Assembly (NCBI RefSeq): GCF_000142905.1
Contig: NW_013657642.1
Span: 65,688-129,687 of the forward strand
Direction: 5' to 3'
DNA length: 64,000 nt
From: Thecamonas trahens ATCC 50062
Lineage: Eukaryota > Protista > Apusomonadida
Part shown: in pieces, positions 729 through 21,717 of the stretch
How the letters are laid out: each line of letters begins with the position of its first letter
Position numbering within the stretch: the first letter of the stretch is position 1
Position numbers and translations under genes: made by a program
The notes under the pieces: model-generated
Databases searched by the model: none
The model's input: the letters and a program-made list of their open reading frames with translations, nothing else
Told to the model about the DNA's origin: nothing

Positions 729-1721
729 TCACTCGAGCCCGCCAGTGTCAATCAGCCAAGGCTCGTGGTCAAAGTCAAGCCCGAGCACGTCGCGGAGCTG
801 GACGTGGATGCGGTAGGTGGTGACCAGATCAAGCGGGCCGTCCACCACAAACGCAAACGTGCCGGTTGCCGCCACAAAGTACCCATGTCCGTCCACAACG
901 TATGTCGTGTCACCAAGCGAGACCACGCTCCATAGCGCCGTAAAGATCCACGGCACTGACTCGATGCCCGCCGCCAGCAGCTCCACCACCACCTCCATCG
1001 CCAGCGAGAACTGAAAGACAGCATGCTTCCGTGGAAAGTTGAGCGCAAACTTGATCGGTGCGAGCGCAGCCATCGGCGCCTGCAGCATGTGCAGCCGCCA
1101 CGGATCGTCTGCCGCCCACGGAAGCGGTGCCATTCCGTCACGAAAGCCTCGCATTGCCGCCGGCAGGCTCTCTACGCTGTACAGCTGCGCTGTCGCTAGC
1201 TCGTCTCTGCTGTTCCCAAACCCGAGCCGCATCTTGGCCATCACCACAGCGTCGGGCACCACGCCTGCCCGCCAAAGCGATGCCGTCGGATGCAGCAGCC
1301 CCCACCCAAGCACCATTCCGCCCAGCTCGAGCCGCATCTCTTCGGCCGGCCAGCCGAGCGCTTCGGCCACCACCTCGCGAGCATCGGCGATGGCAGCCGA
1401 GAGTGGGAGGACGACCACAACAGTCGTGCTTGGCGCCGAGATCACAATCTCGACGGGGCGCCTTGTCAGGAACGAGTCAAGCGCCATGATCATCCCTCGC
1501 CAGTCGGTATCCGCCACTCGTCCACCTTCAGGTGGCGCATGGATGGGCGCAATGGCGGTGTGTGCCAGGCGGATGCGGTAGATGCGGCGAAGAAGGAACG
1601 GATCGCGTGCTATGGAAGCCAGCCGGGTGCAGGTACATGCCACAGCCGCCAGGGAGGCTGGCGATGACACACCGAGTTGGACGAGGATGTGGTGGACGAG
1701 TTCTGTTGGAAGGCTCTCCAT
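729..1721 (-). CDS. F-box protein with an internal ubiquitin-like domain
   Basis: N-terminal F-box (LPTELVHHIL...LAAVACTCTRLASIARD). A segment VEIVIS...IADAREVVAEALGWPAEEMRLELGGMVL...MRLGFG follows the ubiquitin pattern. Confidence 0.7.
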   Translation of the reverse strand: MESLPTELVHHILVQLGVSSPASLAAVACTCTRLASIARDPFLLRRIYRIRLAHTAIAPIHAPPEGGRVADTDWRGMIMALDSFLTRRPVEIVISAPSTTVVVVLPLSAAIADAREVVAEALGWPAEEMRLELGGMVLGWGLLHPTASLWRAGVVPDAVVMAKMRLGFGNSRDELATAQLYSVESLPAAMRGFRDGMAPLPWAADDPWRLHMLQAPMAALAPIKFALNFPRKHAVFQFSLAMEVVVELLAAGIESVPWIFTALWSVVSLGDTTYVVDGHGYFVAATGTFAFVVDGPLDLVTTYRIHVQLRDVLGLDFDHEPWLIDTGGLE

Positions 1722-1913
1722 GTAGAAAGATGGTGCCGCAGTTGGGCGGGGTGCGGTGCTGCTTGCCTGCGGCCTCGCCCACCTGGCGGCTGCCGGCTGC
1801 TGTCGGCTGCCCGGTCGATGGTGCGAGTCATCGCCAGATCCAAGGCGGGAGCGCTATGCTGATGGTAGAGATGGTGATGTTGTTAATGATGAAAGTAGAG
1901 AGGACAATCGCTG

Positions 1914-4900
1914 CTACTTTGCGGCGGCGCTCGAGCCGAGGCCGAGTCCTCGGCGGAGGAGGGCGACGTTAACGACGGCGAGAATGCCGGTGACCAAGAA
2001 CATAGCAAGGCTGAAGACGACGATGCGAGCCACTGCGCTGCCGCGCTTGTGGTTGGGTACACAAAAGCCCAGCGGGCTGCCGATTGCGCTGCAAATAGCC
2101 ACGACTGCCATCGAGGCGATCGGCGCAGCGAGCTCCCGAACCGGGAGCGGGCGCGCGGAGAGCAGGGTTGTGCCTCCGAGCGTGGTGCCGAGCGTAAGCC
2201 CGCACATGGCAGCCACAGATGCGGTCACCGTGACGAGCGAGCTATGGCAGACCGCCTCAGAGTCAAACCTGGTGAGGCAATCGGTGCATCCGGCCACCTT
2301 GGCCTCGGTCGCCGCCCAGTATGTCGTGATGACGGCGAGGATGCAGCCTACCGCAAACGCCGCGACCTTCCGAGCCCATCCCGTGCGTCCAAAGCCCATC
2401 AGCTCGCGCGACACGTTGGTAACACTTTCAAGATCCGTTGAAGCCAGCCACGTCGAGAGGGCGATGAGATTGCCCGAGACAAGTAGACCAGCGACGTACG
2501 CCGGAGTTGGAAGGAGAAGGAGCGAGCCGCTGGCACCAAAGAAGACTAGAGGCGCAAGGACAAACGGGAGGAGTGCGAGCCAGTGCTGGAGAACCACATC
2601 GAGGAAGACGTAGAAAAGACGGGCTCGGACAATGGCCGGTGCCACCGTTGCGAGCACAGGCTGCGTCAGCGAGACAGAGTCAATGTGAGTCGAGTTCTCT
2701 GGGTTGTTGGACATCAGCAGCTGGCCGCGATCAAAGGCGCGGCCGTCGTCGCCATCAAACACCAGGCAGCCGACGGTCTCGCCCCGGGACTCGAGACCCA
2801 AAATGAGCTCACGGCCAGCGCGCGTATTGCCGTGGGCAAGGTTGCGCTTGGCGAGCCCGACTTCGTTTGCCCCGGAGCGGAGCTGCCGCTCGGGAACATC
2901 CCAGCCAAAGACAGCGATGTCAACGCCAGCCTCGCGGATGTCGCGGATGCTGTCGCAGATGCTGCTGCGGGCGTGCGGGACAACGTGCCAGCCATCAAGC
3001 GCGACAAAGCCGACGAGCGCAAATCGAGTGTGGCTGAGCTCGGAGGATGCGATTGATCCGTCCTTAGCAACACTACTTGGCACCGCGGCAACAGCGATAG
3101 CCCAAACCTTGCGGCCACTCGCCTCTGCGGCTCGTGCTGCTGTTCCAGCGGACTGCCTAGCGGCGCTGGTGTGTCTGATGACAGCATCCGGTGCTCCGAG
3201 CAGGACCAGGTACGTCCCGCGATTTGGCTTGCCAAACAACGCCGAGACTTCAGCCGACGGGCCGACGGCAAAGTCGGGAAAAGCCGCCAAATACGAGCCG
3301 GAGAACGACGCATCGGTCGCCTGTAGGTGGGCAGCTGCCGCCACCGCGCCGGCGTCGAACGCAGTGCGCTGCTCGACGCTGCGCATCCACGACAACGAGA
3401 CGGGCTCCACATCCATGTCGCTCATGTGACTCCCTGCCAGTGAGGCCAGGAGCCTAAACAACACATCTTGCCCAGGCGTCAGCTCCTCATCCGACGACGA
3501 CGACGAGCCGCACTCGGTGATCTCAATCCAGGAAGGCCGCTGCTACTTTCCTCTGCCGATGCCGCCGCCGCCAGCTCCTCCGAGTAGGCCCTTGATGACG
3601 AGTTCGTCGAGCATCCATCCAAGAGCTCGGTGGAGTAGTAGCTAGCGGTATCGTCAGCGGCTGCAAGACGGGTCAGCAGGTCATGAGCCGATGGCCGCGG
3701 GCGAGTCAGCTCATCGCGCACTGCACGTTCAAACTCGAGATCGACAGCAAAGGCAGTAACGTCGGTGCCCTCCTCGCCGAGGTGCCGGTGTGACATGACA
3801 AGCGTGGTCATCGAAGCCAGTGAGCCAAGCGTATCACGCTCGAGATGGCGACAGGCGACCATGTTCTTGCGGTTGAGGAAGGTCAAGACCGTTCGCGCGT
3901 AGCCAATGTCGCACAAGATGGTAAACGAGGTCGAGGCGATGATGGCAAGCGCGATAGCCACCGTGATGGCCACCAGCTCGGCGACACGGCTCGATCCAGC
4001 TGACGCCTCGTCTGCTGCGCGGATGGCGGCGACAACGACGCCAACAAAGCATATGAGGACGCAAAGTGCAAACCATGACTTGACAGGCCGGTGTGTACCG
4101 GGCGGGAGACGCGACTGTGGCGCGCCATCGTTGCTCGACGCCGCATAGCTGCCCTCGTCCAGCAGCATCCGCAGTTGCGCCGGCACCTTGCCACCGTGGG
4201 CAAGGACAACCCCGGTCCCACCGCCGGCCAAAACAGCGGTGCCCGGAAGGAGCACATTAGAGACGCTCGTCCCGAGATCGGGGCAGATGATGGTAGAGCC
4301 TGTGTCGACCTTGAACTCGCGGCTTGCGCCGGCGAGCCGGACTGCGGCTCGGATGAAGGTGCCTTGCTCGAGCGCGATGATGTCGCCGGGCACGAGGTCC
4401 TTGACCTCGACGGCGCAGCGTTTGCTGTTGCGCGTCGCAAAAGTCATAGCGTGGCCATCAACAACAGTTACTTGCAATTCATCCACCCCGCGGGCCTGTA
4501 CGAGCCCGTAGCCGATGCGCCCGAGCTTCAACAGGATGTGGAGAGCGAGGAGAACAGCGAGAGCGATGGCGGACTCGGCACCGCCATCTGCAAGCAAGAG
4601 CCATGCGATGGTAGCAAGAAGCACAAGTATAGACGCGAGCGGGAGCTGGCGGATGAGCCCGGGGACGGTCGGCATCGAGTTGAACACGCTGGCCACAATT
4701 CTGTTCTTCCATTGGCAACAGGCGCCACCGCCGGAGATCTGGCCGTCAACGGTCGAGCCCGTGACACTGCTGGCCCCAGCCTCGGCAGCACGGCGAGCAA
4801 CCTGAGATGACGAGAGTCCATGCTCAATGTTGGTCTTGAGCGAAGCCACAACCTCCTCGAGTGGGCGAAGAGCTCCTCGGCTCTTTGCGCGCTTTCCCAA
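1914..4900 (-). CDS. Degenerate P2-type ATPase-like membrane protein (two ORFs joined across a probable frameshift near 3530); catalytic motifs lost
   Basis: Cation-ATPase N motif (LKTNIEHGLSSSQVARR), actuator (KDLVPGDIIALEQG, PGTAVLAGGGTGVV), P-domain remnants (DSIRDIREAGVDIAVFGWD; LESRGETVGCLVFDGDD) and C-terminal TM helices. ORFs 3479-4900 and 1914-3464 are colinear halves of one ATPase. Confidence 0.65.
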
Positions 4901-18924: not shown

Positions 18925-21489
18925 TTACGACGAAATCGATGAGTCTGAGACAGAGTCGTAGGTGTAGTACGCCTCGATGCCCGAGTCCTCGTCCGAGGCC
19001 GCAGCGGGGACAAGCGCACCAGCGCGCCGCAGACGGGTCTCGTTGTGCTCGCCGTAGCGTGGGCCGCGCCAGAGCGGAAGGACCTGATGGCCCTTGTGCG
19101 AGCGGAACTGCCTGCGGAAGACGCCGTCGGCACCCGAGTCCGAGGTAAATGATGAGTACGACGACTTGTCGGCCGGAGACTGGAAGATCTCGGCCGTGGT
19201 GTCGTCGAGGACGCCAAGAAGAGTGGCAAAGAACGCGAGGCCGACCATGATGTACAGGCAGACAAAGATCTTGGACGGCGTCGAGTTGGGCACAATCTCG
19301 CCGTAGCCAATGGTCGAGAGAGTGACTACCGAAAAGTATACCGCAGTCCCATACTCACCCGACTGCTGGATCGGTGGATCCTGCAGCTCCATGAAGATGG
19401 CGGCACCAACAAGATTGAGGATGACAAAGGCGAGCGTCATGACCAGAACCTTGGTGGCAAGCCGCGCGACCTTGCGCCGCCACACTGCCCGCACCGCGGC
19501 CTTTTCCTCGTCCTCGGCCCGCTGGATGGCACGGATGGCGGCGATGGCGCCGGCAGCCGCCTTGCTGGACTTAAATCTTGGCGCCGCGGCGCTCGATCCA
19601 CTCTCACCCGCTTCCCCGCTTTCCGATGTCGGCGTAAAGCCTGACGCCGACGACAGACACGGGCTTCTCGAGCCCGAGTCAGAGTACGATTCGTGCTGCT
19701 CGTCATAGGTAGAATCGGGCGGGGCCTCCGAGTCGGCGACCTTGAGCGAGCGCTCAAAGTCGCGGATGCGGGCGTCGCGCTTCTCCTGCAGCTCAAACTG
19801 GGCCTCGTCGACCTTGGACTTGGAGATGATGGCGATGGTAATGGAGACAATGAAGGTGCCGAGGACCGAGTAAACAATGACAAAGCCCTTGGTCCCGTCG
19901 TTGGTCGGCACAAAGTCGCCGTAGCCGACTTGCGAGAGGGTGATGAAGCAAAAGTACACGCCGTCACCCCAGGTCCACTCAGGCTCGTTGAGGTAAATGA
20001 GCGAGCCGAGGAGGACTGAGACGGCGAGGACGGCGACGGCGGCCATCATGTGGCGAAAGAATATGCCCGATGGGCCATACCAACACGCGCAGCACGGCCG
20101 TGAAGCGGCGCGGTTGTTGGCCGCGTCGATGTCGTCCTGGGTCAGCTTGCCGTGCAGCGCGTCGGCCGACGTCACGTACGAGGCTGCCGTCCGGGTGAGG
20201 ATGGCGTTGGAGACGACGCCGATGGCGTAACCGCGCGCGGCAAGGCCAAGAACGGTAAAGGGGATGAAGAGTAGCCGCGAGTTGTCCTTGGTGGGTGCAA
20301 AGTCGCCAAAGCCAACGGCGTTGACGGTGACAAACGCCCAATAGATGCCGTCAAAGTAGCGCCAGTCCTCGATGAAAGAAAAGATGGCGCCGCCGATGAG
20401 GACCGAAGCTGCCGAGAAGAGGACTGCCATGGTCGGCTCGAGCGCGTTGGAGACGAGTGAAGAGAGCAGTTGGCGGCCGGCATAATCGTCCATGACCGGC
20501 AAGTTGACCGCGCCGATGACCACGACCTCGATGCACGAGGTGCCCGGTAGGCAGCGGGCCGAGAGGTGAAGGGTGGGCGGTCCGGTAGTGAGCGGCTCGA
20601 TGTCATCATCAAGCACAATGCGAGCCTCAAAGTCGCGCCACTCGGGCGCAACGTCGGCGACGGCGAGAAAGGCAAAGCCGATGCGGTCGTCGGCGTTGGC
20701 CACGTCGTAGTCGAGCACTTCAAACTCAAGGATCAGCCCCGCATCGTCAAAGGCTGGTGCCGCCTCGTGCTGCTGGACGGCTAGAGCGTCGGTGTCGACG
20801 ACCCACACCTGATTCCACAGCGGATGGAGCGAGCGCGGGACGACGGGTGTTTTGTATGCGTGGCGGGCGCAGGGCGAGCACCACTCGAACCGCGGCAGGC
20901 AGCACGGGCCACCAGGCATGGCACAGCCATTGCGGCCTGCACATGCCACAGGCTCGTTCCGCAGCTGGACATAAGGATCGGCGGTGCCTGCCTCGGCGAG
21001 GCGGGCAACAACATTGTTGACGCGACGAGCAGAGGCATCGGCAATGATGGTGATGAGTAGCGAGAGAATAGCCAGGCCAAGCATGCCTACAAAGACGACT
21101 GTGGCCTGGCCACCAGCAGAGGTGGGGAAGATATCACCGTAGCCAACCGTGGTAAGTGTGGCCCAGGTAAAGTAGATGGCATCGAGAGTGGAGAGGTCCT
21201 CAAAGTTGGCGACGAGTGCGGCGGCAATGACGACGACAGCGACGAGTGTGACGACAAAGATGATACGCTTGCGGTAGAAGGGTGTATGACGAGCATCATG
21301 ATGGCGATGTACACCATGGATGTGTCTGTGATGGAAGTGGAACTCTCCATCAGCATCCACATACTCATCGTAGGCTGACGAGTACGAGCACGAGAACGAC
21401 GACACTCCGCCCAGCCTGCTCTGCTGTCGGCTCTTGTGACCGCCCTGCATCAGCGCCTTGGCTGCTCCGTAGTTCTGGTACCACGCCAT
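18925..21489 (-). CDS. Potassium channel with four tandem TM-pore-TM domains and a permuted C2 domain
   Basis: Four filter motifs (TTVGYGD, NAVGFGD, SQVGYGD, STIGYGE), each flanked by TM helices. C2 motifs lie between pores 1 and 2. ATG at 21489. Confidence 0.9.
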   Translation of the reverse strand: MAWYQNYGAAKALMQGGHKSRQQSRLGGVSSFSCSYSSAYDEYVDADGEFHFHHRHIHGVHRHHDARHTPFYRKRIIFVVTLVAVVVIAAALVANFEDLSTLDAIYFTWATLTTVGYGDIFPTSAGGQATVVFVGMLGLAILSLLITIIADASARRVNNVVARLAEAGTADPYVQLRNEPVACAGRNGCAMPGGPCCLPRFEWCSPCARHAYKTPVVPRSLHPLWNQVWVVDTDALAVQQHEAAPAFDDAGLILEFEVLDYDVANADDRIGFAFLAVADVAPEWRDFEARIVLDDDIEPLTTGPPTLHLSARCLPGTSCIEVVVIGAVNLPVMDDYAGRQLLSSLVSNALEPTMAVLFSAASVLIGGAIFSFIEDWRYFDGIYWAFVTVNAVGFGDFAPTKDNSRLLFIPFTVLGLAARGYAIGVVSNAILTRTAASYVTSADALHGKLTQDDIDAANNRAASRPCCACWYGPSGIFFRHMMAAVAVLAVSVLLGSLIYLNEPEWTWGDGVYFCFITLSQVGYGDFVPTNDGTKGFVIVYSVLGTFIVSITIAIISKSKVDEAQFELQEKRDARIRDFERSLKVADSEAPPDSTYDEQHESYSDSGSRSPCLSSASGFTPTSESGEAGESGSSAAAPRFKSSKAAAGAIAAIRAIQRAEDEEKAAVRAVWRRKVARLATKVLVMTLAFVILNLVGAAIFMELQDPPIQQSGEYGTAVYFSVVTLSTIGYGEIVPNSTPSKIFVCLYIMVGLAFFATLLGVLDDTTAEIFQSPADKSSYSSFTSDSGADGVFRRQFRSHKGHQVLPLWRGPRYGEHNETRLRRAGALVPAAASDEDSGIEAYYTYDSVSDSSISS

Positions 21490-21717
21490 GGTGGTGGTGG
21501 GGTGGGTAAGGTGGGTGTGGGTGGGTGTGGGTGGGTGGGGGTAGCCCCGGAGGGGGGGGGGGGGGGGCGGACAAGCGACGATGGTGTCTGTCTGGCAAAG
21601 TGCCAAGTGCCGATCCCGTCCCAGCCGTCCGTTGCCTGGCAGCCCACAACCACAGCCTCCTCCTCCCCCTTCTATACAACATACCATCTGACTCTGCAGT
21701 AGGTGGCCTCTACGAGC

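What the first reader, a model, noticed from the sequence alone, without database searches (positions are those of the whole stretch)
20485..20990. Circularly permuted C2 domain, opened at its Ca2+-binding loop and wired into the channel: candidate new Ca2+-gating mechanism
Seen: the C2 elements run GTADPYVQL ... YKTPVVPRSLHPLWNQ ... EVLDYDVANADDRIG ... EWRDF ... TLHLSAR ... IEVVVIGAVNLPVMD. Known: in synaptotagmin-type C2 domains the V.VI.A.NLP.MD strand directly precedes G.SDPYV, and together they form Ca2+ loop 1. Here that strand comes last, so the order is beta3-8 then beta1-2, unlike either classic C2 topology. All five acidic ligands appear retained (VMD, ADPY, DYD x2, DDRIG). The new termini connect to the inner helix of pore 1 and to the first helix of pore 2. 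Inference: Ca2+ binding could close the split loop and pull on the gate. The domain may derive from the middle of a tandem C2A-C2B gene. A Cys-rich insert follows beta3.
Basis: partly seen in the sequence, partly recalled or inferred. Interest (0 to 1): 0.9.

Follow-up and report, generated by a model that had tools for sequence, protein, structure and literature searches.

The report
Permuted C2 domain inside potassium channel
A potassium channel of the protist Thecamonas carries, between its first two pore units, a calcium-binding C2 domain whose chain is cut open exactly at its calcium site and joined to the channel's own helices; this is a third strand order for a very common domain, and it may let calcium act directly on the channel.

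Summary
The window is Thecamonas trahens. The gene (18925..21489, minus strand) encodes a single-chain K+ channel with four pore domains. Residues 234-400 (window 20488..20988) form one C2 domain with strand order b3-b8, b1, b2 in synaptotagmin numbering, cut at Ca2+-binding loop 1.

Evidence:
- Pfam C2 hits never cover profile positions 1-18.
- A family profile aligns colinearly across the C2A->C2B junction of synaptotagmin-1 (E 8e-21, about 30 bits more than C2A alone).
- AlphaFold2 gives pTM 0.75, with pLDDT 95-97 on the terminal hairpin.
- VIA-align superposes seven of eight strands on topology-II C2 domains (Z 9-11). Only the targets' first strand is left unaligned.

The same arrangement is present in at least four Thecamonas paralogues and in marine metagenome and Tara-catalogue relatives at 25-59% identity. 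All five Asp ligands are invariant. The spacing from the flanking selectivity filters is fixed within 1-2 residues, while the domain's internal length varies from 125 to 221 residues.

Ca2+ binding and Ca2+ gating are inferred, not shown. I found no paper describing this. Another first-stage note of this scan (s1-746495) flags the same design on another piece of this genome.

Verdict: a real new C2 topology in a new channel architecture; its function is untested.

The parts
18925..21489 (-). Gene for a single-chain K+ channel with four pore domains (about 854 aa from the conserved start MAWYQNY; the raw ORF extends upstream to 21687). Annotated in Thecamonas trahens as a 'calcium-activated outward-rectifying potassium ion channel' (P0001).
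   Evidence: ORF list; Pfam Ion_trans_2 E 7e-60 in 4 stretches; 100% match to P0001; N-terminus conserved with P0002.
21025..21267 (-). Pore domain 1 (M1, pore helix, filter TVGYGD at 21133-21150, inner helix M2); ORF residues 141-221.
20989..21021 (-). Helix continuing from the pore-1 inner helix (residues 223-233). Only four residues (AGTA) separate it from the Asp of DPYV.
   Evidence: AF2 secondary structure H2-12 of the segment model.
20962..20988 (-). N-terminal half of the split Ca2+ loop 1 plus strand b3 (GTADPYVQL, residues 234-242; ligand D237, equivalent to Syt1 D178).
   Evidence: D-P-Y invariant; strand 17-21; aligned to the Syt1 TSDPYV motif.
20857..20961 (-). Cys-rich insert in the b3-b4 connection (residues 243-277). 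Predicted with low confidence; length and Cys pattern vary among relatives.
   Evidence: pLDDT <50 for segment residues 35-40 and 44-53; alignment A3.
20794..20856 (-). Strands b4-b5 (YKTPVV...HPLWNQVWVV, residues 278-298).
   Evidence: Pfam C2 profile from position 33; AF2 strand 69-77.
20662..20733 (-). Strand b6, Ca2+ loop 3, strand b7 (LEFEVLDYDVANADDRIGFAFL, residues 319-342; ligands D326, D328, D334, equivalent to Syt1 D230, D232, D238).
   Evidence: Invariant D105, D107, D112, D113, G116 of the segment; HMM alignment to Syt1; AF2 strands 98-105 and 113-121.
20575..20643 (-). Strand b8 (EWRDFEAR, invariant W350) and the 15-residue connection b8->b1. Topology II C2 domains have this connection; topology I domains lack it.
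   Evidence: AF2 strand 130-135.
20488..20574 (-). Hairpin b1-b2 (TLHLSARC...IEVVVIGAVNLPVMD, residues 372-400) ending in the C-terminal half of the split Ca2+ loop 1 (ligand D400, equivalent to Syt1 D172).
   Evidence: pLDDT 95-97, strands 151-158 and 164-173. Aligned to b1-b2 of Syt1 C2B, adding about 30 bits. Strand 151-158 superposes on the last strand of topology II C2 domains. L396, P397, D400 invariant.
20188..20487 (-). Pre-M1 helix starting right after D400, and pore domain 2 (filter AVGFGD at 20302-20319); residues 401-500.
   Evidence: AF2 H180-188.
19813..20067 (-). Pore domain 3 (filter QVGYGD at 19915-19932).
19198..19479 (-). Pore domain 4 (filter TIGYGE at 19297-19314).

Best explanation
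The cytoplasmic link between the inner helix of pore domain 1 and the outer helix of pore domain 2 of this single-chain four-pore K+ channel is one folded C2 beta-sandwich. It is circularly permuted at Ca2+-binding loop 1. Its strand order is b3-b8, b1, b2, a third topology beside the two known ones. This much is shown (my odds about 0.9).

Because of the cut, the two halves of loop 1 each carry one Asp ligand: D237 just after the M2 extension helix, and D400 just before the pre-M1 helix. Each half is continuous with a channel helix. The other three ligands (D326, D328, D334) sit on loop 3.

Inferred (odds about 0.5): the domain binds Ca2+ at the membrane-facing tip, probably together with inner-leaflet anionic lipid as in other C2 domains. 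Ligation bridges the two half-loops and loop 3. That changes the distance or angle between the cytoplasmic ends of M2 (pore 1) and M1 (pore 2), and so biases the channel's gate. In effect this is a built-in Ca2+ sensor, one per channel.
For: Permutation, sequence evidence:
- Pfam C2 hits cover profile positions 19/25/33 to 91-92 and never 1-18. In paralogue L003 the hit starts at position 19, exactly at SDPYV.
- The family profile A4 matches tandem C2AB chains of Syt1/3/7 at 67-78 bits through one stretch (profile 50-172). That stretch runs from C2A b4 to C2B b2. Isolated C2A scores about 47 bits and stops at profile position 123.

Permutation, structural evidence:
- AF2 of residues 222-410 gives pTM 0.75 and eight strands. 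The hairpin has pLDDT 95-97, and helices flank both ends.
- All Foldseek hits are C2 domains at probability about 1.
- VIA-align top hits are topology-II C2 domains (cPLA2, PLC-delta1, PKC-epsilon, dysferlin C2A, Munc13 C2B): Z 9-11, rmsd 2.4-3.0 A, about 105 residues. Model residues 10-161 align to chain residue ~18 through the last residue. So seven strands, including model strand 151-158, are in canonical places. Only the target's first strand, which corresponds to the model's last strand, is left over.
- Split-domain test (body 225-366 plus hairpin 367-410): ipSAE 0.59 against a best control of 0.01. The tool's verdict is 'weak support'. The mark was reached by 51 of 78 solved complexes and 2 of 108 mismatched pairs. 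At 0.60 or under it was reached by only 5 of those 78, and by all 4 mismatches that passed. The runs agree in at least 87% of contacts, and the partner's pLDDT is at least 68.

Conservation and function:
- The same order is present in P0002, P0004, P0005, P0006, P0007, P0008/P0157, P0010 and paralogue L003, at 25-59% identity.
- D237, D326, D328, D334, D400, G337 and L396-P397 are invariant.
- The pore-1 filter to D(DPYV) spacing is 55-56 residues. The D(xMD) to next-filter spacing is 57-59 residues. The domain itself varies from 125 to 221 residues.
- Both ends of K+-channel M1-P-M2 units are cytoplasmic (established knowledge), so the domain faces the cytosol with its Ca2+ tip at the membrane.
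Against: - No Ca2+ binding or electrophysiology exists for any member.
- I had no model coordinates, so the placement of the very last strand (385-394) rests on its pLDDT, its hairpin with the superposed strand, and the weak complementation score. It does not rest on a permutation-aware superposition.
- An open loop 1 could lower Ca2+ affinity.
- Tandem-pore channels often gate at the filter rather than the helix bundle, so 'pulling on the gate' may be too simple.
- One C2 per four pore domains gives an asymmetric sensor.
- Some four-pore relatives lack the insert (P0009), so it is not needed for channel function.
- Transcription of this exact gene is not shown by stranded RNA reads.
Confidence: 0.55

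Rival explanations
1. The permuted C2 binds Ca2+ and/or anionic lipid, but it serves as a membrane-docking, targeting or stabilising module for the M2-M1 connection (for example lipid-dependent localisation or assembly). It would have no direct effect on open probability.
For: Most C2 domains are Ca2+/phospholipid membrane-docking modules (PMC10369986). The domain's tip is necessarily held at the inner leaflet by its two short tethers. P0141 carries an ordinary N-terminal C2 on a two-pore channel, so C2-channel fusions need not be wired into the gate.
Against: An inserted C2 of normal topology would also have adjacent termini, so insertion alone does not require a cut at the Ca2+ loop. The cut point and both junction spacings are held fixed while the rest of the domain varies by about 100 residues.
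Confidence: 0.25
2. The domain is a Ca2+-independent structural spacer. It would be a C2 fold that has lost metal binding because loop 1 is open, kept only as a rigid linker or protein-interaction surface.
For: Many C2 domains do not bind Ca2+ (PMC10369986). Loop 1 is interrupted by the rest of the protein.
Against: All five Asp ligands are invariant across paralogues and relatives down to 25% identity, while surrounding loops diverge freely.
Confidence: 0.12
3. It is not one domain. It would be two leftover C2 fragments (the tail of one C2 and the head of another) that do not fold together, or an artefact of gene prediction or assembly.
For: The sequence aligns colinearly to the C2A-tail/C2B-head of synaptotagmins. 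That is also what two fragments would do.
Against: - The AF2 model is compact, with pTM 0.75 and the hairpin at pLDDT 95-97.
- Seven strands superpose on single C2 domains.
- The hairpin docks on the body at 0.59 against 0.01 for controls (weak support).
- The arrangement is conserved in independent contigs and in at least four paralogues.
- Public contigs show no joints.
Confidence: 0.04

Closest known systems
Synaptotagmin-type C2 domains (topology I; Syt1 C2A/C2B, PKC-alpha C2)
   Same: Best sequence relatives (E 8e-21 to 1e-11). Same beta-sandwich. Same five Asp ligands on loops 1 and 3. The contiguous b1-b2 hairpin matches topology I.
   Different: In topology I the strand ...NLP..D directly precedes SDPYV. 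Here it comes last, and loop 1 is open, with its halves joined to channel helices. A b8->b1 connection exists that topology I lacks.
Topology II C2 domains (PLC-delta1, cPLA2, PKC-epsilon, dysferlin C2A, Munc13 C2B)
   Same: Best structural matches (Z 9-11, about 105 residues). They share the b8->b1 connection, so seven strands align in sequence order.
   Different: Topology II starts with the strand that is last here. Its loop 1 is intact.
Ca2+-gated K+ channels with built-in cytosolic sensors (MthK/BK RCK gating ring; plant TPK1/KCO1 EF-hands; SK-calmodulin)
   Same: A cytosolic Ca2+-binding module is attached by a short tether to a pore-lining helix of a K+ channel. This is the same idea at the level of function (established knowledge).
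   Different: The sensor fold is a C2 domain, not RCK, EF-hand or calmodulin. Pfam finds none of those in this protein. There is one sensor per channel, inserted between two pore domains and tethered at both ends through the Ca2+ site itself.
Tandem-pore K+ channels (animal K2P, plant TPK, fungal TOK1)
   Same: Best channel matches in the PDB are TOK and K2P chains (E 1e-29 to 1e-15). Repeated M1-P-M2 units with GYGD-type filters.
   Different: Four pore domains in one chain rather than two per subunit. A folded domain sits in the position of the short M2-M3 loop.
P0141 and P0131 (uncharacterised protist two-pore channels with a C2)
   Same: K+ channel plus C2 in one chain. P0131 reads as the same permutation, and its last Asp sits 59 residues before the next filter, as in the family.
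   Different: P0141 has a normally ordered N-terminal C2. In P0131 the module precedes pore 1, so its DPYV end is not tethered to a helix, unless the gene model is truncated. Its AF2 model is of low confidence.

Membership tests
C2 domain superfamily (Pfam PF00168) | Significant match to the C2 profile | tested here: met
   E 1.2e-7 (32 bits, cutoff 22) on the segment; 1.9e-12 to 9e-8 on relatives.
C2 domain superfamily (Pfam PF00168) | Eight-stranded antiparallel beta-sandwich | tested here: met
   The AF2 model has eight strands and pTM 0.75. VIA-align gives Z 9-11 and rmsd 2.4-3.0 A to solved C2 domains. The position of the eighth strand is inferred, not superposed.
Ca2+-binding C2 domains | Five acidic ligands on loops 1 and 3 (Syt1 D172, D178, D230, D232, D238) | tested here: met
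   D400, D237, D326, D328 and D334 align to them and are invariant in the family. Actual Ca2+ binding cannot be tested here.
C2 topology I | Strand order b1-b2-b3...b8, with loop 1 continuous | tested here: not met
   b1-b2 follow b8. Pfam positions 1-18 are absent before DPYV.
C2 topology II | Strand order b2-b3...b8-b1 (Syt numbering), with loop 1 continuous | tested here: not met
   The targets' first strand has no sequential counterpart; chain ranges start at about residue 18. The equivalent strand is the last one here.
K+ channel pore superfamily (Ion_trans_2, PF07885) | M1-P-M2 units with a T/S-x-G-Y/F-G-D/E filter | tested here: met
   Four stretches, E 7e-60. Filters at residues 180, 457, 586 and 792.
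K2P/TPK two-pore channels | Two pore domains per subunit, dimeric channel | tested here: not met
   Four pore domains in one chain.
RCK-, EF-hand- or calmodulin-gated K+ channels | Presence of an RCK/TrkA domain, EF-hands or a CaM-binding domain | tested here: not met
   No such Pfam family at E <= 1. The database name 'calcium-activated' is not based on any of them.
Ca2+-activated K+ channel (functional class) | Open probability raised by cytosolic Ca2+ | not testable with these tools
   Needs electrophysiology.

The most novel reading that the evidence does not exclude
This would be a gating principle not seen in any characterised channel. The Ca2+ site of a C2 domain is split, so that its two half-loops are the direct continuations of an inner and an outer pore helix. 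Ca2+, with inner-leaflet lipid, re-closes the site and thereby moves the helices. Together with that it would be the first 'topology III' C2 domain, possibly older than apusomonads if the Corallochytrium-like P0131 is confirmed.
Probability: 0.4. Interest if true: 0.85.

Novelty: new variant of a known kind. Interest (0 to 1): 0.75.

Why it matters
C2 domains are among the most studied Ca2+/lipid sensors. The literature held here describes two strand orders (PMC10369986). A third, cut at the metal site itself, would show that the fold tolerates an open loop 1. It would also provide a natural 'split sensor' design.

For channel biology it would add a fourth kind of built-in Ca2+ sensor on K+ channels, beside RCK, EF-hand and calmodulin. 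The coupling geometry is unusually direct, with tethers of only 4-6 residues at both ends. That makes it an attractive minimal system for studying how ligand binding is transmitted to pore helices, and a template for engineered Ca2+-gated channels.

It also bears on the early ion-channel repertoire of the sister lineage of animals and fungi.

Tried and rejected
- Pfam on the 40-aa end pieces alone gave no hit; they are too short.
- The word-indexed search scored on the C2 region alone returned only the protein itself and P0002. It gives no view of wider distribution.
- The search for relatives of P0131's N-terminal region found channels without the C2, so no alignment could be built for that lead.
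- The first AF2 job for P0131 failed. The second gave pLDDT 46-65 over the C2 region. Its strand order fits, but the model is too weak to use, so I did not run a fold search on it.
- Pairwise comparison of the four pore domains, meant to order duplication and insertion, gave 27-37% identity in all pairs. It was uninformative.
- RNA evidence: only contigs were available. Runs of 'organism A' are of unknown library type. One metatranscriptome holds an identical 151-nt contig (20778-20928). There were no joints, but also no proof of transcription or strand.
- Foldseek TM-scores are low (0.3-0.58) with large rmsd, because its alignment follows sequence order. I rejected them as a measure of fold quality and used VIA-align ranges instead.
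- I built no re-permuted (b1-b2 moved to the front) sequence for Pfam or AF2, because that string has no reference.
- I did not fold the full-length protein. The tools return no coordinates or PAE, so the C2-pore geometry could not have been read.
- Five literature searches found no description of a C2-containing K+ channel or of a third C2 topology.
Full report
IDENTITY AND GENE MODEL. The finding lies in a 920-codon minus-strand ORF (18925..21687). The ORF is 100% identical to a Thecamonas trahens ATCC 50062 protein annotated as 'calcium-activated outward-rectifying potassium ion channel' (P0001, 823 aa). The conserved start is M67 (21489): MAWYQNYGAAKA is shared with a 59%-identical relative, P0002. 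P0002 comes from an intronless gene on a marine metagenome contig (L001). Pfam finds four Ion_trans_2 stretches (E 7e-60) and a partial C2. The four filters are TVGYGD, AVGFGD, QVGYGD and TIGYGE. The only intron in the annotated model (21268..21360, 93 nt, in frame) lies upstream of the finding and is probably spurious, because P0002 keeps the His-rich peptide it would remove.

THE OBSERVATION.

IS IT A PERMUTED C2? SEQUENCE EVIDENCE. The Pfam C2 hit covers profile positions 33-92 of 104 in the window protein. In paralogue L003 it covers 19-91, starting exactly at SDPYV. No member covers positions 1-18, which model the strand L.V.V..A.NL...D. A single-sequence search of the PDB already aligned the segment colinearly over synaptotagmin-7 and -1 from C2A b4 to C2B b2, though weakly (E 0.16-0.4). 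With a five-member family profile (A4) the result is strong. Tandem C2AB chains of Syt1, Syt7 and Syt3 score 67-78 bits (E 8e-21 to 1e-17) through one stretch spanning profile 50-172. Isolated C2A chains score about 47 bits and end at profile position 123. The terminal 'PtlrlelrvlpatsvlevrvigasdLPvmD' consensus aligns to the b1-b2 hairpin of Syt1 C2B. The same alignments place D400, D237, D326, D328 and D334 on the Syt1 C2A ligands D172, D178, D230, D232 and D238. The Syt1 residue numbers are from established knowledge.

STRUCTURAL EVIDENCE. I folded residues 222-410 with AlphaFold2 using a nine-row family alignment (A3). The result was mean pLDDT 78 and pTM 0.75. The elements, in order, are:
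- helix 2-12;
- strands 17-21, (58), 69-77, 98-105, 113-121, 130-135, 151-158 and 164-173;
- helix 180-188.
The hairpin blocks have pLDDT 97 and 95. Only the Cys-rich insert (35-53) is below 50. Foldseek returns only C2 domains (probability about 1), at modest TM-scores, as expected for a sequence-order aligner on a permuted fold. Alignments to topology-I targets are about 112 columns, against 157-172 for topology-II targets. VIA-align gives the decisive ranges. The best 50 hits are dominated by topology-II domains (cPLA2 1rlw, PLC-delta1 1djh, PKC-epsilon 1gmi, dysferlin C2A, Munc13 C2B, Trichomonas C2). They give Z 9-11, rmsd 2.4-3.0 A and 98-108 aligned residues, with model residues 10-161 aligned to chain residue ~18 through the final residue. 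Model strand 151-158 therefore occupies the place of the last strand of topology II, which is b1 in Syt numbering. The only unaligned target strand is the first one, whose counterpart here is the last strand (164-173). This is the pattern expected for order b3-b8, b1, b2. I had no coordinates, so the eighth strand's position is inferred from its pLDDT and its hairpin partner. As an independent check I ran a split-domain test of body 225-366 against hairpin 367-410. It scored ipSAE 0.59 against a best control of 0.01. The tool rates this 'weak support': the mark was reached by 51 of 78 solved complexes and 2 of 108 mismatches, but at 0.60 or under by only 5 of those 78 and by all 4 mismatches that passed. 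The runs agree in at least 87% of contacts, and the partner's pLDDT is at least 68.

A FAMILY, NOT A ONE-OFF. An exhaustive phmmer search of 1.84 billion representatives with pore1-C2-pore2 gave 7995 hits, but only six below 1e-30. The same insert is present in P0002, P0004 (AMSG_07212), P0005, P0006, P0007, P0008/P0157 and P0010, at 25-37% identity (59% for P0002). P0009 is a four-pore channel without it. A six-frame search of the window's own genome added a further paralogue on contig C29 (L003). It also showed that P0007's model is truncated: pore 1 and an STDAYVKI strand lie upstream in another frame of L004. Thecamonas therefore has at least four copies. The other members come from marine metagenomes and from a Tara-derived catalogue. 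Invariant positions in ORF numbering are D237-P238-Y239, P281, P289, W295, D326, D328, D333, D334, G337, W350, P371, L396, P397 and D400. The spacing from the pore-1 filter to D237 is 55-56 residues in all members, and from D400 to the next filter it is 57-59. The C2 itself ranges from 125 to 221 residues, through inserts after b3 and between b7 and b8.

HOW IT PROBABLY WORKS. Both ends of an M1-P-M2 unit are cytoplasmic (established knowledge), so the domain is cytosolic. Its new termini are the two halves of loop 1 at the Ca2+-binding tip. Each half is 4-6 residues from a helix that continues into the membrane, so the tip must sit at the inner leaflet under the M2/M1 ends. An ordinary C2 also has adjacent termini and could have been inserted unpermuted. 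The cut lies in the metal site, the ligands are invariant, and the tether lengths are fixed. Together these argue that metal (and lipid) binding at the junction is the point of the design. I therefore favour a built-in Ca2+ sensor that changes the relative position of the pore-1 inner helix and the pore-2 outer helix. All of this paragraph is inference.

ORIGIN. The arrangement is what the duplication-then-truncation route to circular permutation would give from a tandem of topology-I C2 domains, and the nearest sequences are synaptotagmin-like. The colinear alignment cannot distinguish that route from others. The pore domains give no timing signal.

WIDER LEADS. P0141 is a two-pore channel with a normally ordered N-terminal C2. 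P0131 carries the EukProt name Clim_evm22s156; I read the prefix as Corallochytrium limacisporum, which is my own expansion of it. It is a two-pore channel with EF-hands. Its C2 hit also starts at profile position 19. MAFFT places its MDPYV, YDQDAFSTDD and ...ILEGIDMQD motifs in the family's columns. Its last Asp is 59 residues from the next filter. Its AF2 model shows eight strands in the same order, but at pLDDT 46-65, so this remains a lead.

COMPARISON WITH WHAT IS KNOWN, AND NOVELTY. The literature held here describes two C2 topologies and five Asp ligands (PMC10369986). Five searches found no C2-bearing K+ channel and no third topology. By fold and ligands the domain belongs to the C2 superfamily, but it fails the strand-order criterion of both topologies. 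The channel belongs to the K+ pore superfamily but is not a two-pore channel. It has none of the known Ca2+ sensor domains of K+ channels. I rate it a new variant of known kinds, with a substantial chance of a new coupling mechanism. Another first-stage note of this scan (s1-746495) describes the same design on another piece of this genome, which fits the paralogues found here.

LIMITS. The following were not available or not done: coordinates or PAE; a permutation-aware aligner; stranded RNA reads; any experiment. I built no re-permuted sequence, because such a string has no reference.

Noticed in passing
window 21268-21360 (minus strand): The annotated model P0001 removes a 93-nt in-frame GT...AG 'intron' encoding a His-rich peptide (VDADGEFHFHHRHIHG...). 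The 59%-identical relative P0002 keeps the homologous peptide, so the intron is probably a prediction artefact. The His-rich N-terminal stretch may be a conserved metal-binding feature.
   Followed up: partly
L004:827-1351 and 1351-3300 (G000 contig C14): The Thecamonas 'potassium channel' P0007 (KNC47251.1) is N-terminally truncated in its model. Pore 1 and the STDAYVKI strand lie upstream in another frame, which implies a missed intron or a frameshift.
   Followed up: partly
L003:1321-3357 (G000 contig C29): A further Thecamonas paralogue with a compact version of the permuted C2 (no long inserts; C2 Pfam E 1.9e-12). It was not among the proteins returned by the protein searches. Its pore 1 appears split by an intron.
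   Followed up: partly
P0131 (EukProt Clim_evm22s156), residues 124-270: A two-pore, EF-hand K+ channel whose N-terminal C2 reads as the same permutation, placed directly before M1 of pore 1. Its DPYV end is apparently not tethered to a helix. The AF2 model is of low confidence, and the gene model could be truncated.
   Followed up: partly
P0141, residues 36-165: A two-pore K+ channel of unknown organism with a normally ordered N-terminal C2 domain. This shows that C2-K+ channel fusions exist in more than one form.
   Followed up: no
window 20857-20961 (residues 243-277): The Cys-rich insert after b3 has six Cys here. Most relatives keep a CC pair, but P0006 has a single Cys, so the pattern is not conserved. 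It sits at the end of the domain away from the membrane. Its function is unknown (Zn site, acylation or neither).
   Followed up: partly
window 20778-20928: A subsurface metatranscriptome run (X1) holds a 151-nt contig identical to this stretch of the Thecamonas gene. That is odd for the habitat and could reflect contamination or a very close relative.
   Followed up: no
P0009 (676 aa, Logan contig): A single-chain four-pore K+ channel related to the family but without the C2 insert. It would be useful as a natural control.
   Followed up: no
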